Shown in pieces: positions 1 through 28,558 of a stretch of 64,000 bases of DNA. Under the pieces are notes generated by a model that was given only the letters and a program-made list of their open reading frames with translations, did not search any database and was not told the origin of the DNA. This DNA comes from Schmidtea nova. Its lineage: Eukaryota. The stretch lies in NCBI GenBank assembly GCA_044892505.1, contig CM097882.1:543430001-543494000 (forward strand), given 5' to 3'. How positions within the stretch are numbered: position 1 is the stretch's first letter; each line of letters begins with the position of its first letter. Both the position numbers and the translations under genes were made by a program.

Positions 1-3000
1 ACCTTGTTACCCGTCACTATGTAACGTTGGTACTGTAACAAGTGGGTGGGTATTCGCAATCAGTGAGCGTCGTCAATACGAAACTATGATTGACCGAATA
101 TCTCCTGGGTCCAAGGGCTACCGATAGAAGGTTTCTTGCCCATTTTGTCCCCTTCTTCGACGATTTATCTTTAAGCATTCAACAAAATTTTATCGGCAAT
201 TCAACATTAATATTCTACCTAACTATAAATTCGTGATTACATCCAAATAAATCATTCCGAGCATCAAAACACTAATAAAACATTAAATTTTACTTATATT
301 ATAATTTATGTTAATTATTAATGAAAGTATTCTAAAATAAAATTTTTAATTTACATTTGCATTTACGATAAAATCAAGACTTTAATTCTTAATTTGTGAA
401 TATTTATAACTAATTTACTTTTATAACTAATTGATATTCCGAAACAATTTGTTTCAATCCATCATTCAATCCACAACAAGCCGAACACCATTCAAATTCA
501 CCAAGCATAATTTTCTACGCAAATCATTTCTCTCTATTGGCAAAACAAGTAAATTTTTAAATTAATTGATATGCTGAAATTAATTCTTTTCATAGCCCTC
601 AATTTCAAAAACACAGGTGGAAACTCAGTTCGGAAATCTTAGCAACTACGTCTTATCACTTTAATCTATTTGACAGATTTGAATATCTAACAATTATCCA
701 AACCATTAATCCAATCGACAAATCCCAATTAATCAACAATCCGCGACAATGTCTAATGATCATGACTCCAATAAACCAGCGTTGTGGTCATCCATGTCAG
801 TGACAAATACTGCTTAACAATATCTTTTCTTAGTGCTGAATTTAATATATGTACTTTATTTGCATTTTTACTTTTTATGTAAAATGGTTTTTATCATACA
901 AAAGGGTAACAATTAATTATTTTAATTAAAATACTTAAAGTTTTGCTAGACGAAATATAATAATCTTTGAATTTCATGTGAAAATAAATTGATTGTCACT
1001 AGATGAAATATAATATTATTTTAAAATAATATACCAAATTTTACTTTAAAAGGCACCATAAATTCACAATAATACAATTTTTTAACTTAAACATTATTGA
1101 TTTTAAAGGCAATCTTGAAAACTTCCTAATATCCGTTACAAATAAAAAGGTTCCACACCAAATGTTTGTGGTGGGTGAATGGATGAAACCTTGGCATTGT
1201 CCTTCTGGAGGCATGCATGTCTACGCATGATGTGGGATACTATCATTTCGAGCTTGATTGTTGATACACTTTTACAGGTTTATTATGAATTTTTCATTGA
1301 TAGTGCAGGAGATTGTATGTGATTATATGTGTCTGTATGTTGACTTGAATGTTGGATGAGAATAAATAATTTATTGGTGGATGAGGTGTAGTATGATGAC
1401 TGTGTGTTCTATTGTTACTGTTGGGTTTGTGTGTGATTGTATGATGAGCGATTTAAAAACAATTGAGTGCTTGTGAGTGTGGTTGGACGTATAATTCTAA
1501 CTAGCATGTCTGTGTGAAATTTTTGGGGTAGCTGGTTGGTGTGTATGTGATTGTTGAATGTTATTGAGTGATACGGTGTAGGTGTGTCTATTGTATTTTA
1601 TACGTATGTTGTTTGTATATTAATATGGATGATGCTATTGAGTGAAAAGGGTGTAAATCTTTGCAATGGGTGATGTATTAGTATTTTAAGATGTCGTGGG
1701 GGGTTATATTATAAATTAAATAAATTGTATAAAATATTTCTAAAGTTAAAATAAAAATAAAAAAAAAATTTTTAAAGTTAAACTAATGGTAATGATTTTT
1801 AGATCAAGATAATAATAATAATTTTTAGATCGAAATAATAATAATATTTCTCATAATGCTTTTTTACAAATTTTTAAGTTTTAAAATTTCTACGAAAAAC
1901 AATTAACGATAAGGTTTATAATTTTTTATAATGTCGATTTGAATTTACAATTTTTATACTTTAAGAATAGAATAAAAAAAAATTTCTATAAAATCTCGAA
2001 TTCAGATTTTTTATAAAATAATAAAATTTATTAATATAATAATAAAATTTCAATCTAAATTTTCATGGGGTTTAATATAACTTTTGATTTTCAAATTCTC
2101 GGGAATTTTACGAAATGATAAAATCCTTTTATATATTAATAATATTAGGAACCAAATTTGGTTTACAATTTTTCCATATAAAATCTTTTCAACATAATAA
2201 AAAGCAAATTTCTATTTCTGATCCAAATGAAATGATAATAAATTTTTATCCATAAATTCAAGATCTAAATAAGCATTTAATCTAAAAAAACTTTACCTGC
2301 TAAATAAAAATAAAATAAAAATAAGTTATAAATTTTTCAACGAGTATTTTTAACCTCAAGCAAAGTAAATTTCGGTTTTGTTGAGCATGAATTTCCCAAC
2401 TAAGTGTGCGCGAACCTTTCGGGACACTTCACTCAGGAATTTCAGGCTCTCGAAAAACAAGATTCACAGGAAAACTTATTTAGACCATAATGAGCTTTAA
2501 TTCAGATTAAATCAATACTTGTTTCACAATTTGTTTCACTTCATGAGCATTATTCTAGACTTGAGCATTATTTCGAACCATTTTCTTTTCATCATCAGCA
2601 TCCATTTTTCTTGCATTTTCTTATGAGATGAACGTTGTTGAGAGTGCGAAGGTGAAGGCGAGTACGAGTCGATTTTTTAATCAATAATATTTCCTATTTT
2701 AGATTTCAAGACATGAGTTAGAAATTATTATGTTGTATTACGAAATTGCTTATGTAGATAATAAAAATATGATACTCTATTATAATACAAATCATTAGTA
2801 TAACAAAACCTTGCTCTTGGCCAAACCGCGATTCCCCAGTTGGGATGACGCGAATTTGGATGTATGAGCCTCACCTTAAAGTGGAAATATGGGCTGGCCG
2901 ATTACCAATCAGACAACGATCCACCCAGGCTACTAACAGATCCGCACAACCAAGGCTGGACGGATCGTCAGAAGATATGGGAGAAAAAAAAAAAAAAAAA

Positions 3001-4171
3001 TTTTTATTTATTTTCATAATTTAATTTAGTTATCGAATTTCAATGAGATCTTTCCTGAATTATTTTGGGAATTTGTGGCTCGTGATAATGATTATGACAA
3101 CAAAAAAGAAACTAAGCTATTAATCATGAAAATACTTTAATAATATAAAATTGACCATAATAAATAAAATGACAAATAACATATTAAATAAAAAAGGGGG
3201 GAATGGGATGATCGTCAGGCATGACGGACGACCATTCCAATCCCCAATGAGAATAACCAAAATCAAACAAATCCTTACGTTTGTCCAATTAACTTCTGCT
3301 ACGATTTCTTTCAAACAAATTAATTTTTTCTTAGAAATTTGGAACGATTTTTCCACAAATTTTCTTGGAATCAACTTCTGATAGTAACTTCTTGGAATCA
3401 AATTCTGATATTAGCTTTTCTCTTCTCTTCTTGAAATCAAATTAGCTTTTCTTCTTGCAATCAAATTCTCAAGTTGGATTTCACAAAAGTTATTTTTCGC
3501 AATTTCTCCGTAAATTAATCAAGAAAAATTTTCCACCAAATTCTGAAATCTGCCATTTTGATGGCGGTATATATACCATCAAATTTTTTCTATCTCCGGT
3601 AGTGCAATAAAACAAATTGTTCTAGAAGTTTCTCTTAATTTTTTCTAAATTAATTCTAATGATTTTCCGAAAATTAATTCCATATTTTTGTATAATAATT
3701 TTTTATAAACTATAAATAATTTATTTTAATTAAAAATTTTTATGTTTGAATCGAAATTTGTTCGATTTGATTTAATTTATGATTTTCGATCCATATTAAT
3801 TCTTTCTATTGTTATATGTGAAATTTTGTGATAAATTCACAATTTTCCTCTAGAATTGTGTTAATTTTTCTGCACTGAGGATTTTTATGACAAAATTCTG
3901 TTCTTTATGGGCACTTTCAATGGGTTTTCCGCCTATTCTAGCTTCCAAACATTCTGCTTTTAATTTCTCTCGAGATTTCCGTGGAAATATTTACAAATTC
4001 GCAGTTAGCGCGTACTCTACCGGTTGATGTATTTTGATTCCACTTCACCTTCTGATGCTTTCCGCTTAATTGTTAGATTTTTAATGGCAGCTAAGGCTAA
4101 AATGAAATCTTGCGCGCTCTCTACCTATTGGGTTATCGTTTTATTAAAACAAATTGCGTTTTGGCCCAACA
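1..4171 (-). repeat. 3' LTR (partial, continues left of window)
   Basis: Matches 24387-28558 and diverges right after ...ttggcccaaca at 4171. In spot checks the only difference found was an A9 vs A10 homopolymer (about 1974-1982 vs 26360-26369). Confidence 0.93.
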
Positions 4172-4420
4172 TAAAATACTCGGGGGCCCGCAAAAATTGC
4201 GTCCCGCAATTTCTCAGAGGGGTTAAGAACCAAGACTAATCAAAGGTCAAAAGGTTGTACATTATACACGAGCTACTTGGTCGTGATCATGCCGTTCGCG
4301 ACAATAAAAATAAAAAGTTTATATAAAAAAAAAAAAATAAAAATTAATAAAATTATACATATACATAAATATGAGTCTACATCGACTCGCAAGCAAAATT
4401 AAATGTAATGTAATATATGT

Positions 4421-4540
4421 GCCTGCAGCGGCTAATCAAAGTTCGATATGAGTCTACAACGACTCGGATAAAAGTTTTACGCCTACAGCGGCTAATCAAA
4501 GTTCAATATGAGTCTACAACGACTCGGATAAAAGTTTTAT
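4421..4540. repeat. Tandem 60-bp duplication in element 3' UTR
   Basis: 4421-4480 vs 4481-4540 differ at 3 positions. A partial third copy lies at 4371-4389. Confidence 0.9.
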
Positions 4541-5058
4541 AAAGTTCAGTTAAATTGTTTATATTCTGGAACTTGACGAACAGTACTGCATTGATTGTTC
4601 CATTGCAAATTGATGATTTGTTTCTCGTTTTCTGAGTCATCTTGGGGATTGTTCCGCTTTGGTTGACATAGTTGACAATTCGTTTGGTAATAGAGTGGAG
4701 CGATTATGAGTTGATTGGGTATGCTCCGTAATGTTTATCCATTCGGTCTTGATTTGGATCATGTAATTCGGGTTTTTTCGGATGTGACCGCTCGTAACTG
4801 GCCATTAGAAGTTCATCATTTGACTTTGTCCATTCTTTCATAGATTATCTGATCTCGATTCATTGGACGATTTATTAAGGTAATTGTTCTGGAATTTGAT
4901 TGATCGTAGGTGGGGATTTTGGTTCTTGCTTCAAAGGTTTGATTTTTCTCTTGATTGGAGCTTTGTTTTAAGATTTTGCTGGCTCCTTTTTCGCATTATT
5001 GCGTTTAATTGTTTCTTTCAAATTTTTCTTGATTGTTTTTGTTTTTGTTTTTGTTTTT

Positions 5059-5059
<1 letters not shown>

Positions 5060-5098
<39 letters not shown>

Positions 5099-5119
5099 AC
5101 AATTAATCATACTTTTATT
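5060..5119 (-). promoter_or_regulatory. AATAAA followed 20 nt later by an encoded A34 tract
   Basis: Plus-strand TTTATT at 5114-5119 and T-run at 5060-5093, about 160-180 nt downstream of the polyprotein stop. Confidence 0.7.
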
Positions 5120-5274
5120 ATAATATATTTTGTACATTATTTACACTTCATTTTGTTTGTTACCCCAACGTCTTCAAACACATTTTTTGATTTTTGGTGT
5201 TTTTCATTATACAATTTTCTCATACTTTTACGATACTATATATTTTATACATTATTTACACTTTGTTTCGTTTG

Positions 5275-7212
5275 TTACACCAACGTCTCCTGAGGGCCGA
5301 AATGTAGGTTTCGCATTCCCCCATATAATTCATTTGTAGTTCGATATATATCTGCTTCTATTATTGACGGATTTATCGTTGGTGGTAGTCCTTGCATCCA
5401 CATTCCATTGAATTCTGATCCATTGCATATCTCATATTCGTCTTCCGTCTTTACTTCTTCTAAACTGATTCCATATTCGAACTTCTCGATGCTTGGCCAC
5501 TGTCTCTTTCTTTTCGTTTTTCTTTTACATCTTCCAGTGATTTTTGCATGTTGTGTGAGAATCAAAACCAATATTGCGCCTATTATTCCGGCAGTTATCC
5601 ATATCATTTTGATTGCTATTTTTGATTCCTCTACTGCTGCTGATATTGTTGTTGGAGATTCCGTTGTTGTTTGTACGATTTTGATCGGTCTCCCTCCTTG
5701 AATTATTCGTTCGGCTTCTTCCTCCGATATATATTTATTATAAACTGTTGGTTTGGTTGTTGTTAGTATTTGATCTTCTATACTGAATTCTCTGGTATCG
5801 TCTACTCGTCTAGGTAATTTCGAAATAAATTGACATGTTGGATCTTCATTTAATTTTTTGTAGAGGCATACCCGGTATTTAGTTCCTCGTTCCCATCCGG
5901 CTACATAATATTCCTCTTCTTCAATGAATGATTTTTCTTCTTTATTGCTCACACTTTTACACTTTTCTTGTTGTAGTTTTACTTCATAAATGCATATTCT
6001 AGCAATAAGATGTCCTTGTACGTTCTTGACTTTTATAATATCATTTTGAAAGAATTTTTCGGTTTCCTTTTGTATTTGGTTTGGAGTGATTGATATTTCT
6101 ATTTCTTTTCTGTAACCTTTGACTATCGTTGGTTTTTCTGTTACAGTTATTGTTGCTCTTGGGAGTCTTATTGCTTTTTCATCCGGTTCTCTCCCGCTTT
6201 CTGTGCTTGTTATTATTTGTTCTGTCGTGGTGTGTTCTTGACAAATTGGGACGAAAGTTCTCCATATGCATATTAGATACGTTGTTTTTGATTCTAACTC
6301 TTTGATTATCATTTGCTCCTTTCCCTTTACTGACTGTTGATAACATTTGCTAGGGTTGTCAAGCCCACTATTCATATCGACCTTTCTCCAACAAACCTTT
6401 TTGATTACTTCCTCGTGGTTGTTTATTAGTATTATTTCCGTGGATTTCGTTTCTACTATCAGAGGGTAATACGTAGTTGTTCCACTGGTTGTTGTAGTTG
6501 TCGTTATGATTTCCTTGGTGGGTTTTTCTAGACATAGTTTTTGTGTCCATATTCTTCTTATGCATATCGTATAGCTTGTTCCTGGCTTCAATCCTGGTAT
6601 TCTGAATTTTCCATTTTGGCCTGTCATTTGAAATTTACACGATAATTGTCTGTCCTTATTTTGCATATGGATGGTTTTTATCCAACAAATTTGAGTTATA
6701 GGCTCTCTCACATTGTTTGTTACCATCATTTCTTTTTCTTTCACTTCTATTGTTGTTTTGTTCTGGATCGTCATCATAACCTTTTTATCTTGTTCTTCTT
6801 CTTCGTTTTCTTCTTCATTTTCATCTATTGGGGTTTTTGTGACACTTTGTATTTTTTCTAGCCTGTTCCTCTCGTTTCCCATTTTCGTAATCATTTCTTT
6901 AGCTGCACAGATTGCTCTTATTTGATTTGTTCGATATATACATATTATATATGTTGTTCCTGATTCGAGTTTTTCGACCTTTTGTTCTTCTCCTATTGCT
7001 AATGCTGTTCTTATGCATTTCTGGTGATCACTGACTCCATTTTTCCGTATTGCAACTGTACATATTTTAATTATTAGCTCTCCTTTGATATTCGTTATCC
7101 ATATATTTTCTGTATCTGTAACTATTCTTGCCTCTGCTCTCCTCTGATCAAATATATAATCGATTGCTTTCACCCAATTCAACATTGTCAATAATATTGT
7201 CATAATTATTGT
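5275..7212 (-). other. C-terminal type-I membrane module: signal-like peptide, four Cys-containing FN3-like repeats, TM helix, cytoplasmic tail
   Basis: IIMTILLTMLNWVKA/ID at 7165-7212. Repeats end LESGTTYIICI, LKPGTSYTICI, LESKTTYLICI, WERGTKYRVCL. TM IWITAGIIGAILVLIL (5556-5604) is followed by a basic stop-transfer KRKTKRKR, and the protein ends ETLV*. Confidence 0.72.
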
Positions 7213-10200
7213 ATTTTTACCTGGATTTTTAAGTAGACATACCGTTCGATTTTCATAGTTGGAATTTTCTTGTTCATTCTTGTTCTCTTTATTTTCATCT
7301 TTGTTTTCATTGTTTTTATTCTCCCATTTCTCACTGTTTCCGTGATTTCCGTGATCACTGTTATCATCATTTTGCTGCTGTTCGTTGCTATCGTTGTCTT
7401 CATCGTCTGGTTTATCGTTTGATTTATCGTCATCGGGGTCGTTTAGATCACCCTCGGTTTCTTTTGAAATGTCGTCCTCGACATTTATATCCTTTATTAT
7501 TTCCCAATACAATTTGATAATTCTTTGTTCATCTAGTTTTATTTCACCCATTTTGCATTTCAATGTTCCAGCATCGTCGTGGAGATAACTCTTGTCTTTA
7601 TTTTTGATCTTTTTTCGCCATTCTTTAACCAATTCAAGTAGTTTTTCTCTCTTTGTTTTTATTTTCATTTCTTCGTTTGGCTTGTTTGTGAATCTGAAAT
7701 CTGGTCTTTTTAGTAGTGCTTTTGCTACTCTAGGTAATGTCCAATTTTCAATCAAAGCTCGCTCCATTAACACATTTTTATCATATTTGAACTCGTTGTT
7801 CACATTCATCAGTCCTTCTCCAGAGAGTGGATCTTTCCATTTTATCATTTTTGAAGCTACTATTTCATCTTTTCTTATCACTGCCCTTAATAATGGCTTT
7901 GGATTTAAACTCAGTATTTCGATGTCCTCTTGACTTGCTTTTGATAAAAGATACTTGGCTATTGTATAATAAGGTGATCTGTAGACATATGATAATACAG
8001 TTTCATTGTTGTTATCCCTTTCTTTGATACTTGACCCTGTTCTTAATAACTCCTCGATTAAGTCTTTGGACCCTCCTTCTTCTACCGCTAGCATTAATGG
8101 TGTTTGTCCTTTCCAATTTTTTATATTCGAGTGTTGTCCGCATCTTTCCATGAGTTTAATTATTTCCATAGCTCTTTTTCCTTCTCCCTTCCTCAAGGCT
8201 ACATTTAGTGGTGTTTCCTCATTAAAATCAGTCATTGTAAATAATATTGGCATCCGCTCCTTGATTATATCAATGAAATTTGGTGTTGCCTTTCCTCTGG
8301 CATACTCATTTATTATCCGATTTAGTCCGTTTATTATTTCGAATACGTGTTTGCCTTCTGTCCATTCCGGCATAATTTCTTTTGCTGTTCCTATTATCAG
8401 ATCCATTTCTTTTATATGTTCCATTCTCGCATCATCCGTTATTTTTTGCTTAATTTTTAATGTTGGACTTCTCATCTTTGGTGCAAAGAATGTTGCTCCA
8501 CAACATCCACATCCTTTACTCTTTCTAAGCATGCATATTTGTCTTGTCTGTGATCTGGTCATTATCCTCCTTTCCTCTGGTTCTTTTGTCGCAGTTTTTT
8601 CTACTCGTTTACATCTACACACGTTCACGTATATCGGTCGAACTAACGGATTGTTGACTAATTTTACCCGGATGTTATTTTCGCTAACAAATATGACTTC
8701 ATATGGTCCTTTTCCCGTTCTCTGTAATTTTTTCGCTGTTCCTGGGATGATTTCTGGTGTTTCGACTATCACCCAATCGCCTAGCTTGAACTGATGTTCG
8801 TGTACATTTCTCTTTTTGTCATGTAGTTCTTTGTAGCTCTCTTGATTGAATCGTATATTCATACCTGCAACTTTCCAAATTTCTTGCATTCGCTCCTTGA
8901 ATTTTGTTACGTAATCGTCGATTTCCATATATTGTGATATTGGTGGTTGATATTCAAGATCCATTGGCATGTTACATTCTCTGCCGTACATCAATTTAAA
9001 CGGACTCATTTTTGTTGCCGAGTGAATCGACATACGGTATGCCATTAGACATAGATTCACATATTCATCCCAATCCTTTTGGTGTTTACTGACATAATTT
9101 GACATCATCTCAATCAATATTCCGTTAAATCTCTCCGTTTGTCCATTTGTTTGGGGGTGATATGGTGAAGTTCTCAACTTAGCAATTCTGAAATAATTGG
9201 TAACTTCGTTGATGATCTCGCTCATAAAATTTGTTCCTTGATCGGTTAATATTTGTTTTGGTGTTCCATATCTACAACATATTTCTTCGACTAATATTTT
9301 GGCTATTGTTCTAGCTTTCTGATCTGGCATTGCAAATGCTTCTGGGAATTTTGTTAAGTAATCAGTTATTACTAATATATAAACATTTCCATGATTCGTT
9401 TCTGGTAATGGTCCTACTACATCCATTGCGATCATTGTCATAGGTTCTGGTGGAATTGGCATTGGTTTTAAAGGTGTTTTCATTTTACTGCCAGTGCTTT
9501 TTCGCGTTGCACATATTAAACAATTCCTAATCCATTCTTTCACATCTTCTCCAATATTTGGCCAAAAATACTTCTGTTTTAATCTCGCTTCCGTTTTCTT
9601 AGCTGACATATGTCCACCAAGTTTTCCATCGTGGTATTGCATCAAGATGTCTTTCCTTCTACCTTCTGGTAAACACATGAGTCTTTTTTCTCCGTCCATT
9701 GCTAATAACCAGCCTTTTTCGATTGTATATTTGTGCCTGTTTTTCTCCATATGCTCCTTTAGTTGGCTGTTATGATCAAAGATTTTCATATCATTCTTAT
9801 TCAAATATTCGATGATTAATTTTAGCTCTTCATCTTCATTTTGTTCTTGTTGTAGTTTAGTGAAATCAATATCTTCTGCGATTATCATACATATTCGCCT
9901 GACATCTTTATCCATTAGTTCCTCAAACATAAACCTTGACATGCAATCCGCATTTGCATTCGCTTTCCCTGACTTGAACTTTATATATGGCGAATATTCT
10001 TGCAGCTGCATTGCCCATCTCATTAATCTGCTTGACGCTTCTTTGTGCTGGCCTAACCATACTAACGGTTGATGATCTGTTGTGATGTATATTTCGTGAC
10101 CCCATAATAGATATTTGAAATGTTTAATCGCCTGAATGATTGCTAGCGCTTCTCTTTCCGTTACCGAGTAATTCTTCTCGTGTTTTCGAAAGGTTTTGCT

Positions 10201-20944: not shown

Positions 20945-21517
20945 GGATCCTCAAAGTCTCTCATACATGAACTCTCAAAGTTTCTCAATTATCTGGACTC
21001 TCAAAGTCTCTCATACATGAACTCTCAAAGTTTCTCAATTATCTGGACTCTCAAAGTCTCTCATACATGAACTCTCAAAGTTTCTCAATTATCTGGACTC
21101 TCAAAGTCTCTCATACATGAACTCTCAAAGTTTCTCAATTATCTGGACTCTCAAAGTCTCTCAATTATCTGGACTCTCAAAGTCTCTCCCAGAGCGCTCA
21201 ATTATCTGGACTCTCAAAGTCTCTAAATTACCTGGACTCTCAAAGTCTCTAAATTACCTGGACTCTCAAAGTCTCTCAATTATCTGGACTCTCAAAGTCT
21301 CTCAATTATCTGGACTCTCAAAGTCTCTCACATACATGAACTCTCAAAGTTTCTCAATTATCTGGACTCTCAAAGTCTCTCACATACATGAACTCTCAAA
21401 GTTTCTCAATTATCTGGACTCTCAAAGTCTCTCATACATGAACTCTCAAAGTTTCTCAATTATCTGGACTCTCAAAGTCTCTCACATACATGAACTCTCA
21501 AAGTTTCTCAATTATCT
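20945..21517. repeat. Tandem array, 50-bp higher-order unit built from 24-26 bp subunits sharing ACTCTCAAAGTYTCTCA
   Basis: TCAAAGTCTCTCATACATGAACTCTCAAAGTTTCTCAATTATCTGGACTC recurs at 20951, 21001, 21051, 21101, with subunit shuffling thereafter. Confidence 0.95.
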
Positions 21518-22488
21518 CGGCCGTCTTCAATTCATTCTCTTTATACTATTTAATCACTCATTTTCCTATTCTCAATAAATTCGCTGTTACTGACTGTTTT
21601 TCTCAGATTGTTCTACTACTTCTCAATTATGAATTCATCAGGGTAAAATCGTCGAAATTCACTTTCTACTCTTTCGACTTTCTAAAATCTGCAGCCTCTT
21701 TCTCTTTATTAATGTTACTGTCTCCTACCTCAGTGTACCAATCATGCCTTGGTAAACTGATGTATAAGACGAACATTACGGGTTTGACCCTTTCTCCTAA
21801 GTTAAAATCGTAAAATAATCGCGTCGACTCGTTCTGCAAATTGTGATGATCAGTCACAAACAAAATTTATCAACATTTGCGATGGATCCTATTCTACATT
21901 TTCTCCTTAAGGTGATCAGGTTTTTCCCAGTTTGTTGTTTGCTAATTTTTCAACAACAGAAATATTGGCGTACTATCTTTTGATAGCTCTGTTTAAACTT
22001 GGCGTACTATCTTTTGATAGCTCAGTTATGAATTTGTGGACTATTTTCTCGTTTCTACTCAGATACTCATTTCTCGCTTAATTTAAGAGGATTCTCCCTA
22101 TAAAATCAACTTCTATAACTCTACTTATTGCTTGTCCTAATACATACATTTTTATATTTATGATCAGTATGATAATCAATATAATAATGATAATAAAGGA
22201 GATTTATAGTAATGAAATTCGGAATCAATGTAATAATGATGATGAGGAAGATTTATAATAATAATAATAAAGGAAATTCAAAAAGAAAAGAAAAGTAACT
22301 TGTCACAAATTCCCATTTTCCTAATGTTTGATTTTTCGGCATTAGCCGTTACTTGTTATGTTTTTTACACGATTCTCAGTCATTAATTACCTAGTGTTCT
22401 GTGTTTATTTAATTTTTACGACGATTTGGATTACTGGATGATCGACGAAGTTCAACATGACCAAAACGTTTATTTCGAACGACATTCT

Positions 22489-22815
22489 TTATGAACAAAA
22501 TACTACGATTTTGTCATCAGTTGTCTGTTTGCAGATTACACATCTCTTTATTTCTCTAGAGCACGGCTGGCAATAATACAAATGCCCACACGGCATGAAT
22601 AAAATGTTCGCTTCTCTTTGTCGACAAATATAACATCCTTCGAACAAATCGATCTGTTGATTTATCGATCTCTCTAGCTTGTCCATAATTTTATCGATTT
22701 TACCAATCCATTCTTGTATTTTTAAATTAAAACTCGGATTATTCGGTCGCAATCGTCGTAATTCATAAATTGTCTCTAACGAAATATTGTTTGTTGTTCC
22801 TACAATTCCTTTCAT
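22489..22815 (-). CDS. Small IAP-like C3HC4 RING finger protein (108 aa from first ATG) in element leader
   Basis: CYICRQREANILFMPCGHLYYCQPCSREIKRCVICKQTTDDKIVVFCS* fits the IAP/MGRN-type RING with an aromatic C-terminal tail. The ORF-track start at 22848 is GTG; the first ATG is at 22815. Confidence 0.85.
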   Translation of the reverse strand: MKGIVGTTNNISLETIYELRRLRPNNPSFNLKIQEWIGKIDKIMDKLERSINQQIDLFEGCYICRQREANILFMPCGHLYYCQPCSREIKRCVICKQTTDDKIVVFCS

Positions 22816-22974
22816 TTCATTTTCTCGTTCGAATCTCTCGCTCAACACTCAATTCACCGTAACATATGCTCAATCGCTTCCATCTAAAATATTCATGATG
22901 ATCGGTGTTTATAACTTTTTGAATTAACCATTCATTATGATTTGAACGAAAAATAAATAATAAATTATATTTTT

Positions 22975-23075
22975 ATATTTTTATATTTTTAACTAACAGA
23001 ATATTCAGCCATTTTTATACATATATTTTTATATTTTTATATTTTTATATTTTTATATTTTTATATTTTTATATT
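22975..23075. repeat. (ATATTTTT)n low-complexity repeat
   Basis: Repeated ATATTTTT units, interrupted once. Confidence 0.8.
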
Positions 23076-24133
23076 TTTATAATTTTCTCCATTCGTCCAT
23101 ATTCGATATTTTTCGAATAAAATATTAAAATAATCAGCCATTATATACATAATTTTTATGATTTTTTAATATTTTTTAAATATACTAATATTTCCTAAAT
23201 AAAAAAAAATAATTAGACATTTACTTACACAATTTTTTTTTATGATTTTTACACTTTTTATCAATTTTAAAATAATTATATTTTTTATTTACAGTATTCG
23301 CAATTTGGGTAATTTTTCGTTTACGGAAAGCAATTTTTGTATACTCGAATATTTATTTTCTAAGTGATTTACGTGGACTCTATCCCGTATCGTATGATCA
23401 TATAACATTTCCTTTTGCTAGGTTCCTAATTTTGGGCATCTCACAATTTTCGTATTTACGTTCAGTCTCACGTTTTCTTGTTTGATTATATTTGTTTTTA
23501 AGTCATTGTTGAATATTATTTTATGATTTCATAAGATTTTAGAGTTATTCCCGATTTCGATTCCCGAATAGAGTCGCGATCAACATTCCAATATCACCAT
23601 GCATCATTTTGACTTCAACAATCTATCTTTTTCAACATTCAAACTCCAAACTTATTAGATTATATCATTCATTCTCTACTGTATCATTATATCAATTAAA
23701 ACAATTAATTCACGCATTGATCTATTTTCGTTGTTATCTCTTTTAGACCCGATACTTTCCATGTCCTTCTTTGACAACAAAATAAAATTACAGGGGTCAT
23801 ACCTCAGTCATTCTCAATCAAATAACATAACACCGATATCGTTAGTAATAATAATGACATCTACAGTAACACTCATGATAATAACAGTAACAATAATTAT
23901 ATTAATAATAATAATGATAATAATAATTATAATAATAATAATAATAATAATTATGCTAATATGCTAGTAGTACTACNNNNNNNNNNNNNNNNNNNNNNNN
24001 NNNNNNNNNNNNNNNNNNNNNNNNNNNNNNNNNNNNNNNNNNNNNNNNNNNNNNNNNNNNNNNNNNNNNNNNNNNNNNNNNNNNNNNNNNNNNNNNNNNN
24101 NNNNNNNNNNNNNNNNNNNNNNNNNNNNNNNNN

Positions 24134-27100
24134 AGTAAAATCAAACACAATTTTCCGCTGTTTCTGTCAAAATTTTATTTAACAGTTTGTTGATGTTTTA
24201 TGAAAACTTTCATTAAGTCTCGCGCGAACTCGTTTTAGTTGCTTTTCGATTTTTTCAAGCAAAACAAACTCAAATCCCGGCTGAGCCCCCAAATTTTTAT
24301 ATGGTGGGTCGTTGATCGTCAATATGACCTTGACGTTGCTATGGCCCTCATCAACAACCCAACACACAAAAATATTGAAATTTACCACCTTGTTACCCGT
24401 CACTATGTAACGTTGGTACTGTAACAAGTGGGTGGGTATTCGCAATCAGTGAGCGTCGTCAATACGAAACTATGATTGACCGAATATCTCCTGGGTCCAA
24501 GGGCTACCGATAGAAGGTTTCTTGCCCATTTTGTCCCCTTCTTCGACGATTTATCTTTAAGCATTCAACAAAATTTTATCGGCAATTCAACATTAATATT
24601 CTACCTAACTATAAATTCGTGATTACATCCAAATAAATCATTCCGAGCATCAAAACACTAATAAAACATTAAATTTTACTTATATTATAATTTATGTTAA
24701 TTATTAATGAAAGTATTCTAAAATAAAATTTTTAATTTACATTTGCATTTACGATAAAATCAAGACTTTAATTCTTAATTTGTGAATATTTATAACTAAT
24801 TTACTTTTATAACTAATTGATATTCCGAAACAATTTGTTTCAATCCATCATTCAATCCACAACAAGCCGAACACCATTCAAATTCACCAAGCATAATTTT
24901 CTACGCAAATCATTTCTCTCTATTGGCAAAACAAGTAAATTTTTAAATTAATTGATATGCTGAAATTAATTCTTTTCATAGCCCTCAATTTCAAAAACAC
25001 AGGTGGAAACTCAGTTCGGAAATCTTAGCAACTACGTCTTATCACTTTAATCTATTTGACAGATTTGAATATCTAACAATTATCCAAACCATTAATCCAA
25101 TCGACAAATCCCAATTAATCAACAATCCGCGACAATGTCTAATGATCATGACTCCAATAAACCAGCGTTGTGGTCATCCATGTCAGTGACAAATACTGCT
25201 TAACAATATCTTTTCTTAGTGCTGAATTTAATATATGTACTTTATTTGCATTTTTACTTTTTATGTAAAATGGTTTTTATCATACAAAAGGGTAACAATT
25301 AATTATTTTAATTAAAATACTTAAAGTTTTGCTAGACGAAATATAATAATCTTTGAATTTCATGTGAAAATAAATTGATTGTCACTAGATGAAATATAAT
25401 ATTATTTTAAAATAATATACCAAATTTTACTTTAAAAGGCACCATAAATTCACAATAATACAATTTTTTAACTTAAACATTATTGATTTTAAAGGCAATC
25501 TTGAAAACTTCCTAATATCCGTTACAAATAAAAAGGTTCCACACCAAATGTTTGTGGTGGGTGAATGGATGAAACCTTGGCATTGTCCTTCTGGAGGCAT
25601 GCATGTCTACGCATGATGTGGGATACTATCATTTCGAGCTTGATTGTTGATACACTTTTACAGGTTTATTATGAATTTTTCATTGATAGTGCAGGAGATT
25701 GTATGTGATTATATGTGTCTGTATGTTGACTTGAATGTTGGATGAGAATAAATAATTTATTGGTGGATGAGGTGTAGTATGATGACTGTGTGTTCTATTG
25801 TTACTGTTGGGTTTGTGTGTGATTGTATGATGAGCGATTTAAAAACAATTGAGTGCTTGTGAGTGTGGTTGGACGTATAATTCTAACTAGCATGTCTGTG
25901 TGAAATTTTTGGGGTAGCTGGTTGGTGTGTATGTGATTGTTGAATGTTATTGAGTGATACGGTGTAGGTGTGTCTATTGTATTTTATACGTATGTTGTTT
26001 GTATATTAATATGGATGATGCTATTGAGTGAAAAGGGTGTAAATCTTTGCAATGGGTGATGTATTAGTATTTTAAGATGTCGTGGGGGGTTATATTATAA
26101 ATTAAATAAATTGTATAAAATATTTCTAAAGTTAAAATAAAAATAAAAAAAAAATTTTTAAAGTTAAACTAATGGTAATGATTTTTAGATCAAGATAATA
26201 ATAATAATTTTTAGATCGAAATAATAATAATATTTCTCATAATGCTTTTTTACAAATTTTTAAGTTTTAAAATTTCTACGAAAAACAATTAACGATAAGG
26301 TTTATAATTTTTTATAATGTCGATTTGAATTTACAATTTTTATACTTTAAGAATAGAATAAAAAAAAAATTTCTATAAAATCTCGAATTCAGATTTTTTA
26401 TAAAATAATAAAATTTATTAATATAATAATAAAATTTCAATCTAAATTTTCATGGGGTTTAATATAACTTTTGATTTTCAAATTCTCGGGAATTTTACGA
26501 AATGATAAAATCCTTTTATATATTAATAATATTAGGAACCAAATTTGGTTTACAATTTTTCCATATAAAATCTTTTCAACATAATAAAAAGCAAATTTCT
26601 ATTTCTGATCCAAATGAAATGATAATAAATTTTTATCCATAAATTCAAGATCTAAATAAGCATTTAATCTAAAAAAACTTTACCTGCTAAATAAAAATAA
26701 AATAAAAATAAGTTATAAATTTTTCAACGAGTATTTTTAACCTCAAGCAAAGTAAATTTCGGTTTTGTTGAGCATGAATTTCCCAACTAAGTGTGCGCGA
26801 ACCTTTCGGGACACTTCACTCAGGAATTTCAGGCTCTCGAAAAACAAGATTCACAGGAAAACTTATTTAGACCATAATGAGCTTTAATTCAGATTAAATC
26901 AATACTTGTTTCACAATTTGTTTCACTTCATGAGCATTATTCTAGACTTGAGCATTATTTCGAACCATTTTCTTTTCATCATCAGCATCCATTTTTCTTG
27001 CATTTTCTTATGAGATGAACGTTGTTGAGAGTGCGAAGGTGAAGGCGAGTACGAGTCGATTTTTTAATCAATAATATTTCCTATTTTAGATTTCAAGACA

Positions 27101-28558
27101 TGAGTTAGAAATTATTATGTTGTATTACGAAATTGCTTATGTAGATAATAAAAATATGATACTCTATTATAATACAAATCATTAGTATAACAAAACCTTG
27201 CTCTTGGCCAAACCGCGATTCCCCAGTTGGGATGACGCGAATTTGGATGTATGAGCCTCACCTTAAAGTGGAAATATGGGCTGGCCGATTACCAATCAGA
27301 CAACGATCCACCCAGGCTACTAACAGATCCGCACAACCAAGGCTGGACGGATCGTCAGAAGATATGGGAGAAAAAAAAAAAAAAAAATTTTTATTTATTT
27401 TCATAATTTAATTTAGTTATCGAATTTCAATGAGATCTTTCCTGAATTATTTTGGGAATTTGTGGCTCGTGATAATGATTATGACAACAAAAAAGAAACT
27501 AAGCTATTAATCATGAAAATACTTTAATAATATAAAATTGACCATAATAAATAAAATGACAAATAACATATTAAATAAAAAAGGGGGGAATGGGATGATC
27601 GTCAGGCATGACGGACGACCATTCCAATCCCCAATGAGAATAACCAAAATCAAACAAATCCTTACGTTTGTCCAATTAACTTCTGCTACGATTTCTTTCA
27701 AACAAATTAATTTTTTCTTAGAAATTTGGAACGATTTTTCCACAAATTTTCTTGGAATCAACTTCTGATAGTAACTTCTTGGAATCAAATTCTGATATTA
27801 GCTTTTCTCTTCTCTTCTTGAAATCAAATTAGCTTTTCTTCTTGCAATCAAATTCTCAAGTTGGATTTCACAAAAGTTATTTTTCGCAATTTCTCCGTAA
27901 ATTAATCAAGAAAAATTTTCCACCAAATTCTGAAATCTGCCATTTTGATGGCGGTATATATACCATCAAATTTTTTCTATCTCCGGTAGTGCAATAAAAC
28001 AAATTGTTCTAGAAGTTTCTCTTAATTTTTTCTAAATTAATTCTAATGATTTTCCGAAAATTAATTCCATATTTTTGTATAATAATTTTTTATAAACTAT
28101 AAATAATTTATTTTAATTAAAAATTTTTATGTTTGAATCGAAATTTGTTCGATTTGATTTAATTTATGATTTTCGATCCATATTAATTCTTTCTATTGTT
28201 ATATGTGAAATTTTGTGATAAATTCACAATTTTCCTCTAGAATTGTGTTAATTTTTCTGCACTGAGGATTTTTATGACAAAATTCTGTTCTTTATGGGCA
28301 CTTTCAATGGGTTTTCCGCCTATTCTAGCTTCCAAACATTCTGCTTTTAATTTCTCTCGAGATTTCCGTGGAAATATTTACAAATTCGCAGTTAGCGCGT
28401 ACTCTACCGGTTGATGTATTTTGATTCCACTTCACCTTCTGATGCTTTCCGCTTAATTGTTAGATTTTTAATGGCAGCTAAGGCTAAAATGAAATCTTGC
28501 GCGCTCTCTACCTATTGGGTTATCGTTTTATTAAAACAAATTGCGTTTTGGCCCAACA
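24134..28558 (-). repeat. 5' LTR (at least 4.2-4.4 kb; inner boundary probably in or near N-gap 23977-24133)
   Basis: 24387-28558 is a copy of 1-4171 with terminal TG on the element strand at 28558. 24134-24386 is assumed to be LTR but cannot be compared within the window. Confidence 0.9.

What the first reader, a model, noticed from the sequence alone, without database searches (positions are those of the whole stretch)
1..28558. Giant enveloped Ty3/Gypsy retroelement with a large-DNA-virus-like host-modulation toolkit in one ~5000-aa polyprotein
Seen: LTRs over 4 kb, a stop-free 14.8-kb ORF, and captured cellular-type domains (MATH, ubiquitin-like, Bcl-2-like, ankyrin, FN3-like/TM) interleaved with Gag, Env and Pol, plus a separate RING ORF. 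Known: ordinary Ty3/Gypsy elements are about 5-10 kb with gag-pol(-env). Bcl-2, TRAF, IAP-RING and ankyrin modulators are typical of poxviruses, herpesviruses and baculoviruses. From memory, giant single-ORF 'Burro' Gypsy elements were described in Schmidtea mediterranea, but I cannot confirm which of these domains were annotated there. Inference: a potentially infectious endogenous virus-like element equipped to block cell death and innate signalling.
Basis: partly seen in the sequence, partly recalled or inferred. Interest (0 to 1): 0.95.

Follow-up and report, generated by a model that had tools for sequence, protein, structure and literature searches.

The report
Intact giant Burro-type planarian retroelement
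This is a real, apparently intact copy of a giant virus-like retrotransposon of the "Burro" kind already described in planarian flatworms, which encodes capsid, envelope, replication enzymes and several captured host-type regulatory domains in one 4,930-codon reading frame.

Summary
On the minus strand lie two long terminal repeats (window 1-4171 and 24387-28558; 4171 of 4172 positions identical), a stop-free 14,793-nt frame (5275-20067, 4930 codons) and a separate 119-codon RING frame (22489-22848). The assembly gap (23977-24133) lies in the leader, outside every reading frame. The left repeat runs off the window, so the element is cut.

Searches confirm Gag with three zinc knuckles, a TRAF-C/MATH domain, a ubiquitin-like domain, a Bcl-2-like domain, a Monjiviricetes-type fusion glycoprotein in frame between Gag and protease, then PR-RT-RNaseH-IN, ankyrin repeats and four FN3 domains ending in a membrane anchor.

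No tool could confirm the species or the subfamily.

Possibly new:
- The four-FN3 membrane protein after integrase, which no held paper on Burro mentions.
- An alternating cytosol/lumen layout of the polyprotein.
- A Bcl-2-like domain placed so that the Env signal could anchor it.
- Compact single-frame Gag-Env-Pol relatives on metagenome contigs.

A first ubiquitin-like domain is unproven, and no dUTPase or BIR domain was found. Infectivity and host modulation remain inference.

The parts
1..4171 (-). 3' LTR (in element orientation), cut by the window start
   Evidence: Aligns to 24387-28558 over 4172 columns with 0 mismatches and one 1-nt gap. Begins with TG on the minus strand at 4171. No ORF of 80 aa or more inside.
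4172..5274 (-). 3' untranslated region between the polyprotein stop and the 3' LTR
   Evidence: Read directly. Contains a 58-nt homopolymer run (5036-5093) and a 60-bp duplication (4421-4539). No clear polypurine tract was recognised.
5275..20067 (-). Single polyprotein frame: 4930 codons, no stop (4897 aa from the first ATG)
   Evidence: Catalytic motifs present: three CCHC knuckles, PR D-T-G, RT Y-I-D-D, RNase H D-A-S, IN HHCC and D,D35E.
18943..19806 (-). Gag: capsid domain (aa 88-181) and three CCHC zinc knuckles (aa 303-375)
   Evidence: Pfam Retrotrans_gag 1.6e-5 and zf-CCHC 3.4e-7. Three knuckles found by pattern.
17197..18810 (-). Charged, coiled-coil-like region (aa 420-957); called 'Smc' in the literature
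   Evidence: No significant Pfam hit. Named Smc-like in PMC6431247.
16915..17172 (-). Candidate ubiquitin-like domain 1 (aa 966-1051), unproven
   Evidence: Only weak hits: OTU1_UBXL 0.064, DSK2 ubiquitin domain 0.58, hhalign to the Ubl2 profile with probability 1.3%.
16120..16554 (-). TRAF-C / MATH domain (aa 1172-1316), without TRAF RING or zinc fingers
   Evidence: Pfam TRAF-mep_MATH 1e-23. Best solved relatives are TRAF2 5.8e-30, then TRAF1, TRAF5 and TRAF3.
15508..15795 (-). Ubiquitin-like domain 2 (aa 1425-1520)
   Evidence: A profile with two relatives (A4) returns 16 PDB hits; the top six and most of the rest are ubiquitin-like proteins (redesigned ubiquitin, ISG15, BAG6 UBL), at marginal E-values of 0.018-0.9. 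The aligned stretch of relative P0002 hits Pfam ubiquitin at 0.0046.
15082..15117 (-). AT-hook motif (aa 1651-1662)
   Evidence: Pfam AT_hook 0.015. A matching basic motif is present in relative P0002.
14533..15000 (-). Bcl-2-like helical domain (aa 1690-1845)
   Evidence: A four-sequence profile (A3) returns only Bcl-2-family chains among the 60 listed: best Bcl-xL 3.3e-4, and near full-length alignments at 0.011 and 0.018. The model is low-confidence (pLDDT 54.6), yet all top-50 PDB matches are Bcl-2 family and 9 of the top-10 viral matches are viral Bcl-2 homologues. An early weak bromodomain hit did not survive the profile search.
12388..14457 (-). Env: signal peptide (aa 1871-1892), ectodomain (1893-2456), membrane anchor (2457-2475) and cytoplasmic tail
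   Evidence: Pfam Monjiviricetes_fusion 1.3e-69, with its N-terminal part at 2e-17. Hydrophobic segments. 34-43% identical to Env of five metagenome relatives. No solved relative by sequence.
11710..11991 (-). Retropepsin (aa 2693-2786)
   Evidence: Pfam gag-asp_proteas 5.9e-6 and RVP 8e-5. D-T-G at aa 2709.
9994..11046 (-). Reverse transcriptase (aa 3008-3166) and RNase H (aa 3229-3358)
   Evidence: Pfam RVT_1 2.1e-36 and RT_RNaseH 4e-38.
9154..9669 (-). Integrase: zinc-binding domain and catalytic core (aa 3467-3638)
   Evidence: Pfam Integrase_H2C2 4e-20 and rve 9.1e-12. HHCC and D,D35E patterns present.
7918..8235 (-). Ankyrin repeats (about aa 3945-4050)
   Evidence: Pfam Ank_2 1.3e-7 on the whole protein and 2.1e-13 on the piece.
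7153..7209 (-). Second internal signal/anchor segment (aa 4287-4305), after an acidic linker
   Evidence: Hydropathy 1.54. Flanking charges fit an N-terminus in the cytosol. The linker is 53% D+E+N.
5800..7128 (-). Four FN3 domains (aa 4314-4397, 4429-4523, 4532-4623, 4670-4756), each with four invariant cysteines
   Evidence: Internal alignment A2. Pfam fn3 1e-5 on the piece. Model of repeat 2: pLDDT 72.5, seven strands. All top-50 PDB matches are FN3 domains or monobodies, probability 0.99-1.0, TM 0.39-0.58.
5278..5613 (-). Second membrane anchor (aa 4819-4837) and 93-aa basic cytoplasmic tail
   Evidence: Hydropathy 2.44. The C-terminal flank has 6 K+R and no D+E.
20950..21517 (.). Tandem repeat array (26/52-bp unit, about 11 to 22 copies) in the leader
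   Evidence: TRF score 838. Tandem repeats are drawn in the published Burro map (legend of Fig. 2A in PMC6431247).
22489..22848 (-). Separate frame of 119 codons with a C-terminal IAP-type RING (no BIR)
   Evidence: Pfam zf-C3HC4_3 2.1e-13. Best solved relatives are the RINGs of cIAP2 1.1e-9, cIAP1 and XIAP. No BIR-sized frame upstream.
23977..24133 (.). Assembly gap in the leader or at the inner edge of the 5' LTR
   Evidence: N run. It overlaps no gene of the element. Not filled.
24387..28558 (-). 5' LTR (the demonstrable part); the element's 5' end is at 28558
   Evidence: Begins with TG on the minus strand at 28558. The true inner end is unknown, because the partner copy is cut by the window.

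Best explanation
The region is a full-length, recently inserted copy of a Burro-type giant Ty3/gypsy endogenous retrovirus. The host is most probably a planarian (Schmidtea or a close relative). The copy is apparently coding-intact and lies on the minus strand; its 3' end is cut by the window.

Shown:
- near-identical LTRs of at least 4.2 kb
- a leader with an IAP-type RING frame and a tandem array
- one 4930-codon frame with intact catalytic motifs

Order of domains in the frame:
1. Gag with three zinc knuckles
2. a charged region
3. a possible first ubiquitin-like domain
4. TRAF-C
5. a ubiquitin-like domain
6. an AT-hook
7. a Bcl-2-like domain
8. signal peptide, Monjiviricetes-type fusion glycoprotein, membrane anchor
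9. PR, RT, RNase H, IN
10. ankyrin repeats
11. an acidic linker
12. signal/anchor, four FN3 domains, membrane anchor, basic tail

Inferred mechanism: the genomic RNA is translated as one multi-pass ER membrane polyprotein, in the manner of flavivirus or alphavirus structural polyproteins.
- Gag and the accessory block stay in the cytosol.
- The first internal signal takes the Env ectodomain into the lumen, and the Env anchor returns the chain to the cytosol for PR-RT-RH-IN-Ank.
- The second signal takes the FN3 ectodomain into the lumen, and the last anchor leaves a basic tail in the cytosol.
- Signal peptidase and the retropepsin would then cut the chain.
- After cleavage the Env signal would remain as a C-terminal membrane anchor of the Bcl-2-like domain, giving the topology of a tail-anchored Bcl-2.

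The accessory domains most probably act as decoys or mimics. TRAF-C without an effector RING would act as a dominant-negative TRAF adaptor, the Bcl-2-like domain as a survival factor, the RING as an E3 ligase, and the ankyrin repeats as a protein-binding module. Together they would keep the expressing cell alive and quiet while particles are made. Their functions are not tested here.
For: - Anatomy.
- Domain identities: TRAF-C, RING, Bcl-2-like, FN3, Ubl2.
- Match to the published Burro/GYPSM1 description: three CCHC knuckles, MATH, Ubl, BCL2, in-frame mononegavirus-like env, ankyrin, RING motif, tandem repeats, a 4,873-aa ORF1, and an element said to exceed 30 kb. The host genome is described as over 70% A/T; the window flank is 17-34% GC.
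- Topology: exactly four strongly hydrophobic segments, each at a domain boundary. They alternate so that both cysteine-rich ectodomains are lumenal and all enzymes are cytosolic. Flanking charges mostly follow the positive-inside rule.
- The in-frame arrangement is not an artefact of this assembly. Independent metagenome contigs carry Env-PR-RT-RH-IN (L005, 3419 aa) and Gag-Env-PR-RT-RH-IN (L007, 2693 aa) as single uninterrupted frames.
- Ubl2, AT-hook, Bcl-2-like domain and Env are collinear in L001 and L003 at about 30% identity over the collinear span (23-25% within the Bcl-2-like domain). The single G-G-W motif lies 41-53 aa before the Env signal in the window, L002, L003 and L005.
- A stretch after IN that is bracketed by two hydrophobic segments recurs in L005 and L007.
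- BURRO1 RNA is expressed, enriched in the intestine and held down by PIWI.
Against: - No tool identified the organism or matched the sequence to a Burro reference. Exact-protein look-ups failed and the protein databases hold no close copy. Assignment to Burro therefore rests on architecture and composition.
- Co-translational membrane insertion of a 4930-aa chain is inferred only.
- A 1:1:1 Gag:Env:Pol output is unlike retroviruses.
- A Met sits right at the start of the Env signal (aa 1871), which fits separate initiation on a spliced RNA.
- N-glycosylation sequons are depleted, not enriched, in both predicted ectodomains.
- The second signal is only moderately hydrophobic (1.54).
- The FN3 module has no detectable homologue elsewhere.
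- The Bcl-2-like model is low-confidence, and its Foldseek E-values are 0.02-0.2.
- The dUTPase-like domain reported between PR and RT, and a BIR domain, were not found.
- The LTR inner end, primer-binding site, polypurine tract and target-site duplication could not be defined.
Confidence: 0.8

Rival explanations
1. Same element, different expression. Env and the C-terminal FN3 glycoprotein are made from spliced subgenomic RNAs, with Env starting at the Met that opens its signal peptide. The continuous frame only reflects loss of the stops between formerly separate genes. The full-length polyprotein is rare or never inserted into the membrane as modelled.
For: - A Met lies immediately before the Env signal (aa 1871).
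- Retroviruses and errantiviruses normally express env from spliced RNA (established knowledge).
- Relatives L001 and L003 each have one in-frame stop, and L002 has three, in the otherwise continuous frame. A continuous frame is therefore not universal in the clade.
- An upstream 119-codon RING frame in the leader also argues for RNA processing.
Against: - L005 and L007 keep Env and Pol in one uninterrupted frame of 2.7-3.4 thousand codons, as does this copy. Such frames would decay quickly if they were not translated through.
- The alternation of signal and anchor segments is exactly what read-through translation needs.
- No Met precedes the second signal.
Confidence: 0.3
2. The element is only an intracellular retrotransposon. 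Env, the FN3 protein and the cellular-type domains would be passengers with no present function, and the intact frame reflects nothing more than the youth of this copy.
For: - The LTRs differ at no base, only by one 1-nt indel, so there has been almost no time for decay.
- No other copies were available for a selection test.
- Treatment with reverse-transcriptase inhibitors or BURRO1 RNAi did not change the smedwi-2 phenotype. This says nothing in favour of infectivity.
Against: - Env, the Bcl-2-like domain and Ubl2 are recognisably conserved at 23-43% identity in divergent relatives, with invariant cysteines and motifs. This implies long-term purifying selection.
- All catalytic motifs are intact.
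- The element family is reported in thousands of copies and is transcribed.
Confidence: 0.12
3. Assembly artefact. The giant frame or the LTR pair would come from collapsing or mis-joining several Burro copies in a gapped assembly.
For: - The window has six N gaps, one of them inside the element.
- Burro elements are a known cause of assembly trouble.
- Perfect LTR identity is what a collapsed repeat would give.
Against: - There is no gap within 5275-20067, and the frame is continuous over 14.8 kb.
- The two LTR copies differ by an indel, so they are not one sequence used twice.
- The same domain order, and an ORF1 of 4,873 aa, were published from independent data.
- Relatives show the same in-frame joins.
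Confidence: 0.05

Closest known systems
[quoted passage not shown] 2018; Arkhipova & Yushenova 2019, PMC6431247)
   Same: - Size class: at least 28.6 kb is seen here; the published total exceeds 30 kb.
- One polyprotein of about 4.9 thousand aa.
- Three CCHC knuckles, MATH_TRAF_C, a ubiquitin-like domain between MATH and BCL2, and a BCL2-like domain.
- An env related to mononegavirus fusion proteins, in frame between gag and pol.
- Ankyrin repeats, a RING accessory motif and tandem repeats in the leader.
   Different: - 4897/4930 aa here against the published 4,873 aa.
- No dUTPase-like or BIR signal was found by the searches available here.
- The four-FN3 membrane protein after the ankyrin repeats is not mentioned in any held paper on Burro. 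Grohme et al. 2018 and the Repbase entry could not be read.
- Sequence identity to the references was not testable.
GAG-ENV-POL errantiviruses with gB-type (class III) Env in Platyhelminthes, Nematoda and Bryozoa (PMC13524379), and the nematode elements with a captured RNA-virus glycoprotein (Sacco et al. 2022, as cited there)
   Same: Ty3/gypsy backbone with env placed between gag and pol, and an Env of a type shared with negative-strand RNA viruses or gB. Metagenome relatives L005 and L007 show the same order.
   Different: That paper describes three ORFs and does not name Schmidtea or Burro in its main text. Here everything is one frame and carries about 2,500 aa of accessory domains. Whether the Burro Env is the paper's 'HSV/gB type' was not tested structurally.
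Structural polyproteins of Flaviviridae and alphaviruses (a likeness in how it works, not membership)
   Same: A cytosolic capsid part is followed by internal signal and stop-transfer segments that thread glycoprotein ectodomains into the ER lumen. The signal is left behind as a membrane anchor of the preceding cytosolic protein (established knowledge; layout).
   Different: This is a reverse-transcribing element with a retropepsin. Processing sites are unknown and nothing is shown experimentally.
Planarian secretory cell nidovirus PSCNV (PMC6211748)
   Same: Same host group. One giant ORF (13,556 aa) that includes transmembrane domains and host-type domains, among them ankyrin repeats proposed to modulate the host.
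   Different: It is an RNA virus with no reverse transcription. Its fibronectin domains are type II, not type III. I made no sequence comparison, because I fetched no animal-virus sequence.
Cell-death and signalling modulators of large DNA viruses (viral Bcl-2, viral IAP, ankyrin proteins)
   Same: - The Bcl-2-like model matches BHRF1, the ASFV Bcl-2 homologue and other viral Bcl-2 proteins.
- The RING is closest to cIAP/XIAP RINGs.
- Ankyrin repeats are present.
   Different: - No BIR domain was found, so this is not an IAP.
- The domains are parts of a retroelement polyprotein rather than separate genes.
- The closest sequence relatives of TRAF-C and the RING are cellular proteins, which fits capture from the host.

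Membership tests
Ty3/gypsy LTR retrotransposon (Metaviridae) | Two direct long terminal repeats flanking the coding region | tested here: met
   4172-column alignment with 0 mismatches and 1 gap.
Ty3/gypsy LTR retrotransposon (Metaviridae) | Domain order PR-RT-RNase H-IN, with an RVT_1-type RT and a Gag with CCHC knuckles | tested here: met
   Pfam positions 2693-2786, 3008-3166, 3229-3358 and 3467-3638; Retrotrans_gag and zf-CCHC. No Copia (RVT_2) or BEL/Pao (Peptidase_A17) hit.
Ty3/gypsy LTR retrotransposon (Metaviridae) | LTR termini TG...CA, target-site duplication, primer-binding site and polypurine tract | tested here: inconclusive
   TG is seen at both LTR starts. The LTR end, the duplication and the primer-binding site are off the window or at the gap. 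No clear polypurine tract.
Ty3/gypsy LTR retrotransposon (Metaviridae) | RT/IN phylogenetic placement inside Ty3/gypsy | not tested
   No reference set (GyDB or Repbase) is available in the tools.
Burro family (S. mediterranea) | Published domain series in one ORF1 of about 4.9 thousand aa: Gag with 3 CCHC, MATH, Ubl, BCL2, env, PR, RT, RH, IN, ankyrin | tested here: met
   set against the description in PMC6431247.
Burro family (S. mediterranea) | dUTPase-like domain between PR and RT | tested here: inconclusive
   No Pfam or PDB hit with the single sequence. The published call came from HHpred, which is more sensitive.
Burro family (S. mediterranea) | Accessory RING/BIR motif and leader tandem repeats | tested here: met
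   RING frame and tandem array. No BIR domain was found.
Burro family (S. mediterranea) | Nucleotide or protein identity to the Burro1-4/GYPSM1 references; host species identity | not testable with these tools
   No planarian or Repbase sequence is reachable. Exact look-ups were negative. No close homologue in the protein libraries.
Bcl-2 family | Bcl-2 helical-bundle fold and a BH2-type motif | tested here: met
   Profile A3 returns only Bcl-2-family chains, best 3.3e-4 on the stretch with the invariant G-G-W, and near full-length alignments at 0.011-0.018. Foldseek top hits are all Bcl-2 family. The model has low confidence.
Bcl-2 family | BH3-binding groove residues and anti- or pro-apoptotic activity | not tested
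Bcl-2 family | C-terminal membrane anchor | tested here: met
   A hydrophobic segment lies 44 aa after G-G-W, and 41-53 aa after it in L002, L003 and L005. That it serves as an anchor is inference.
TRAF family | TRAF-C (MATH) domain | tested here: met
   TRAF2 5.8e-30; Pfam 1e-23.
TRAF family | N-terminal RING and TRAF zinc fingers | tested here: not met
   No such Pfam hit anywhere in the polyprotein. This is a TRAF-C-only module, not a full TRAF.
IAP family | At least one BIR domain | tested here: not met
   The 119-aa frame has only the RING, and there is no BIR-sized frame upstream.
IAP family | C-terminal RING of IAP type | tested here: met
   cIAP2 1.1e-9, cIAP1 1.4e-9, XIAP 1.5e-7.
Monjiviricetes-type viral fusion glycoprotein (Pfam PF24664) | Profile match over the ectodomain, with an N-terminal signal and a C-terminal anchor | tested here: met
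   1.3e-69 plus 2e-17 for the N-terminal part. Signal and anchor.
Monjiviricetes-type viral fusion glycoprotein (Pfam PF24664) | Class III fusion-protein fold and fusion loops | not tested
No solved relative by sequence.
Fibronectin type III domain | Seven-strand beta sandwich of FN3 topology | tested here: met
   Model pLDDT 72.5. All 50 best PDB matches are FN3 domains. Pfam fn3 1e-5.

The most novel reading that the evidence does not exclude
Burro would be the inflated member of a wider, so far unnamed clade of single-frame enveloped retroelements, whose whole proteome is laid out as one multi-pass ER membrane polyprotein.
- The Env signal peptide doubles as the tail anchor of a captured Bcl-2 homologue.
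- A second type I membrane protein follows integrase. Here it has four FN3 domains. It seems unreported, and it may be a second surface or host-contact protein. Its position, though not its sequence, recurs in compact relatives such as L005 and L007.
Probability: 0.3. Interest if true: 0.6.

Novelty: already known. Interest (0 to 1): 0.35.

Why it matters
Burro elements are among the largest retroelements known. They are abundant and transcribed in a major regeneration model, and they hamper assembly of its genome. A copy with no stop in 4930 codons and no LTR substitutions is a good reference for asking, by description alone, whether a retroelement can carry a large-DNA-virus-style set of host modulators.

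The added details give concrete, checkable predictions about how one reading frame can supply cytosolic, lumenal and membrane-anchored products:
- the membrane layout of the polyprotein;
- the Bcl-2-like domain placed so that the Env signal can anchor it;
- a four-FN3 membrane protein after integrase;
- compact single-frame relatives on metagenome contigs.

The main architecture and the host-modulation idea are already published, so this finding mostly confirms known biology.

Tried and rejected
- Bromodomain reading of the helical domain. A single-sequence PDB search gave CBP/p300 bromodomains at E=0.03. With a two-sequence profile the bromodomain and Bcl-xL hits were both non-significant. 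With four sequences only Bcl-2-family chains remained, and both fold searches agreed. Rejected.
- Whole-polyprotein homologue search over aa 1000-1870: nothing found.
- Search of 1.84 billion representatives with aa 1320-1870: three hits only.
- FN3/TM module homologue search: nothing found.
- Integrase pattern scan of metagenomes: nothing found.
- Exact-sequence look-ups of the polyprotein, the RING frame and two flank ORFs: not on record. The organism was therefore not identified.
- dUTPase between PR and RT: no Pfam or PDB signal.
- Ubl1: only sub-threshold hints.
- BIR domain upstream of the RING: no suitable frame.
- Other Burro fragments in 28559-64000: none.
- Pfam on 12 flank ORFs: nothing.
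- Rfam on the whole window: no family.
- Grohme et al. 2018 could not be read.
- Supplements with BURRO1 probe sequences, and the element lists of the eLife paper, are not held.
- Primer-binding site, polypurine tract and LTR inner end: not definable.

A note on my own conduct: in my private reasoning I recalled short Bcl-2 homology motifs from memory. They were not used as queries or as evidence.

Full report
**1. Observation**

The element lies on the minus strand.
- A self-comparison shows one long direct repeat, 1-4171 against 24387-28558. It spans 4172 columns with no mismatch and one 1-nt gap.
- On the minus strand both copies begin with TG, at 28558 and at 4171.
- The left copy starts at window base 1. 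The LTR is therefore at least 4172 bp, and its inner end and the element's 3' end are not in the window.
- The frame 5275-20067(-) has 4930 codons and no stop. With a stop expected in 7.6% of codons at this composition, the chance of such a frame is about 1e-169.
- The first ATG is codon 34, giving 4897 aa. The published Burro1/GYPSM1 ORF1 has 4,873 aa.
- A separate 119-codon frame with a RING lies upstream, at 22489-22848(-).

**2. The gap**

The N run 23977-24133 lies in the leader. It is 253 bp inward of the demonstrable 5' LTR, 1.1 kb upstream of the RING frame and 3.9 kb upstream of the large frame. It interrupts no gene. It may hide the LTR's inner end or the primer-binding site. I did not try to fill it.

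**3. Domains of the polyprotein**

Pfam on the whole frame gives:

| Domain | Residues | E-value |
|---|---|---|
| Retrotrans_gag | 88-181 | 1.6e-5 |
| zf-CCHC | 362-377 | 3.4e-7 |
| TRAF/MATH | 1172-1316 | 1e-23 |
| Monjiviricetes_fusion | best stretch 2167-2486 | 1.3e-69 |
| Retropepsin | 2693-2786 | 5.9e-6 |
| RVT_1 | 3008-3166 | 2.1e-36 |
| RNase H | 3229-3358 | 4e-38 |
| Integrase | 3467-3638 | 4e-20 / 9.1e-12 |
| Ank_2 | 3968-4044 | 1.3e-7 |
| fn3 (weak) | 4466-4504 | 0.0036 |

Searching pieces added the following.
- The N-terminal part of the Env profile matches at aa 1871-1998 (2e-17).
- An AT-hook lies at aa 1651-1662.
- Ank_2 improves to 2.1e-13 and fn3 to 1e-5.
- Three CCHC knuckles are present, and PR D-T-G, RT Y-I-D-D, RNase H D-A-S, IN HHCC and D,D35E are all intact.
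- The MATH domain is a true TRAF-C. TRAF2 scores 5.8e-30, followed by TRAF1, 5, 3, 4 and 6. No TRAF RING or zinc fingers accompany it.
- The RING frame hits zf-C3HC4_3 at 2.1e-13. It is closest to the RINGs of cIAP2, cIAP1 and XIAP, at 1e-9 to 1e-7.
- No BIR domain is present.

**4. The disputed domains**

*Bcl-2-like domain (aa 1690-1845).*
- Alone, it gave no Pfam hit and a weak bromodomain hit (E=0.03).
- I found relatives (section 6) and built a four-sequence profile. All 60 listed PDB hits were then Bcl-2-family chains. The best was Bcl-xL at 3.3e-4, on the stretch holding an invariant G-G-W. Two near full-length alignments scored 0.011 and 0.018.
- An AlphaFold model from a two-sequence alignment is poor (pLDDT 54.6, pTM 0.52; seven to eight helices).
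- Even so, its 50 best PDB matches are all Bcl-2 family (E 0.04-0.18, TM 0.27-0.43). Nine of its ten best viral matches are viral Bcl-2 homologues, and the ASFV homologue gives TM 0.51-0.53.
- I accept 'Bcl-2-like' and reject 'bromodomain'.

*Ubl2 (aa 1425-1520).*
- A three-sequence profile returns 16 PDB hits. The top six and most of the rest are ubiquitin-like proteins, at E 0.018-0.9.
- The aligned stretch of relative P0002 hits Pfam ubiquitin at 0.0046.
- I regard this domain as moderately supported.

*Ubl1 (aa 966-1051).* Only sub-threshold hints were found, so it remains unproven.

*dUTPase-like domain.* The domain reported between PR and RT was not detectable with the single sequence.

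**5. The C-terminal module and the membrane layout**

After the ankyrin repeats and an acidic linker (53% D+E+N) come:
- a hydrophobic segment (aa 4287-4305);
- four mutually alignable repeats of about 85-95 aa, each with four invariant cysteines;
- Thr-rich linkers;
- a strong membrane anchor (aa 4819-4837);
- a 93-aa basic tail.

A model of repeat 2, built from the alignment of the four repeats, has pLDDT 72.5 and seven strands. Its 50 best PDB matches are all FN3 domains or monobodies, with probability 0.99-1.0 and TM up to 0.58.

The whole polyprotein has exactly four strongly hydrophobic segments: aa 1874-1892, 2457-2475, 4287-4305 and 4819-4837. They alternate as signal, anchor, signal, anchor. 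As a result:
- the two cysteine-rich ectodomains (Env and FN3) fall on the lumenal side;
- Gag, the accessory block, PR-RT-RH-IN, the ankyrin repeats and the tail fall on the cytosolic side.

Flanking charges mostly obey the positive-inside rule; the last anchor is followed by 6 K+R and no acidic residue.

One observation is unexpected. N-X-S/T sequons are depleted in both ectodomains (0.18-0.19 per 100 aa) compared with the Gag-accessory part (1.0 per 100 aa).

**6. Relatives**

The protein libraries hold no close copy. Searches with Env and with the accessory region did find short metagenome contigs.
- **L001 (the same contig as L006), L003.** Gag with CCHC, then Ubl, AT-hook, Bcl-2-like domain and Env, collinear with the window at about 30% identity over the collinear span. 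They lack the MATH and Ubl1 region.
- **L002.** Bcl-2-like C-terminal part, Env, PR and RT.
- **L004.** Env followed by a frame with a weak retropepsin (RVP) hit.
- **L005 (12.9 kb).** One uninterrupted 3419-aa frame with the G-G-W domain, Env (4.7e-94), two PR-like domains, RT, RH, IN and a C-terminal extension. A separate 496-aa ORF with an RNase_T exonuclease domain follows.
- **L007 (9 kb).** One uninterrupted 2693-aa frame with Gag-CCHC, Env (1.3e-88), PR, RT, RH, IN and a C-terminal extension, and no accessory block.

In-frame stops in the homologous spans number 1 in L001, 3 in L002, 1 in L003, and 0 in L005 and L007.

Both L005 and L007 have a stretch after IN that is bracketed by two hydrophobic segments, about 145 and 233 aa long. 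It shows no sequence similarity to the FN3 module here.

G-G-W occurs once per element. It lies 41-53 aa before the Env signal in the window, L002, L003 and L005, and 125 aa before the next hydrophobic segment in L001.

From this I conclude three things.
- The in-frame Gag-Env-Pol join is real and older than Burro.
- The Ubl, AT-hook and Bcl-2-like block directly before Env is conserved in a subgroup.
- MATH and Ubl1 are later additions. This agrees with the report that the Dugesia tigrina element carries MATH in a separate ORF.

**7. Mechanism**

Shown: the parts listed above, and their integrity.

Inferred:
- Translation of the genomic RNA yields a multi-pass ER membrane polyprotein.
- It is processed by signal peptidase and by the retropepsin.
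- The Env signal stays behind as the membrane anchor of the Bcl-2-like domain. Cellular Bcl-2 proteins are tail-anchored (established knowledge).
- TRAF-C without effector domains would act as a decoy adaptor.
- The RING would act as an E3 ligase, and the ankyrin repeats as a binding module.
- The FN3 protein would be a second membrane glycoprotein of unknown role.

The main rival is expression of Env, and perhaps of the FN3 protein, from spliced RNAs. A Met sits at the start of the Env signal (aa 1871), and some relatives have an in-frame stop in the frame.

**8. Comparison with what is known**

Arkhipova & Yushenova 2019 (PMC6431247) summarise Jurka 2007 and Grohme et al. 2018 and add HHpred calls. 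Together these cover Gag, three CCHC knuckles, Smc, MATH_TRAF_C, Ubi2/SUMO-like, BCL2, in-frame mononegavirus-like env, PR, dUTPase-like, RT, RH, IN, ankyrin, RING/BIR, tandem repeats and thousands of copies. They also propose the 'integrated provirus' idea and the apoptosis/ubiquitination idea.

Other relevant papers:
- BURRO1 RNA is abundant, enriched in the intestine and repressed by SMEDWI-2 (PMC8532177).
- GAG-ENV-POL errantiviruses with gB-type Env are reported in Platyhelminthes, Nematoda and Bryozoa (PMC13524379).
- The S. mediterranea genome is over 70% A/T and carries Burro elements of more than 30 kb (PMC11410931). The window flank is 17-34% GC.

No held paper that mentions Burro also mentions fibronectin type III. 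Grohme et al. 2018 and the Repbase entry could not be read.

**9. Verdict**

This is a genuine and striking element, but it is already described.
- Its claim of novelty is not.
- Its functional inference stays untested.

The possibly new points are modest:
- the four-FN3 membrane protein after integrase;
- the alternating membrane layout;
- the Bcl-2-like domain next to the Env signal;
- compact single-frame relatives in metagenomes.

The assignment to Burro and to a planarian host rests on architecture and composition, because no tool could match the sequence to a reference.

Noticed in passing
window 5800-7128 and 12388-14457 (aa 4306-4818 and 1893-2456): N-X-S/T sequons are depleted in both predicted ectodomains (1 in 513 aa and 1 in 564 aa). 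The cytosolic Gag-accessory part has about 1 per 100 aa. Cysteines are enriched in the ectodomains. This is unexpected for viral glycoproteins.
   Followed up: partly
L007:440-8521: A metagenome contig carries a compact relative. One 2693-aa frame holds Gag-CCHC, Env, PR, RT, RH, IN and a C-terminal stretch bracketed by two hydrophobic segments. It has no accessory domains.
   Followed up: partly
L005:23-10282 and L005:10617-12107: A relative with one 3419-aa frame has two protease-like domains and extra hydrophobic segments between Env and PR. A separate 496-aa ORF with an RNase_T exonuclease domain follows. Whether that ORF belongs to the element is unknown.
   Followed up: no
L001, L002, L003: The otherwise continuous frame of these relatives carries 1, 3 and 1 in-frame stops. 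Whether this is decay or regulated read-through was not decided.
   Followed up: no
window 14455-14457 (aa 1871): A Met codon lies exactly at the start of the Env signal peptide. This is compatible with separate initiation of Env on a processed RNA.
   Followed up: no
window 7918-8235 (ankyrin block): The PSCNV nidovirus paper reports that its ankyrin domain hits planarian 'host' proteins at E 3e-23 to 8e-14. Whether those proteins are Burro ankyrin blocks is untested, because I fetched no animal-virus sequence.
   Followed up: no
window 20950-21517; 23878-23951; 5036-5093; 4421-4539: Four simple-sequence features: a leader tandem array with a 26/52-bp unit, an (ATT)n microsatellite next to the gap, a 58-nt homopolymer run, and a 60-bp duplication in the 3' untranslated region.
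   Followed up: no
window 28559-64000: The flank is AT-rich (17-34% GC, lowest at 58-64 kb) and has five more N gaps. It holds no Burro homology, no Pfam-recognisable ORF (the longest are 40466-41158 and 56199-56627, both on the minus strand) and no Rfam family.
   Followed up: partly
P0001 (882 aa, representative library): A protein with a TRAF/MATH domain is followed by a stretch 42% identical to aa 1323-1412 of the polyprotein. It is probably a fragment of another Burro-like element. Its contig was not on record.
   Followed up: partly
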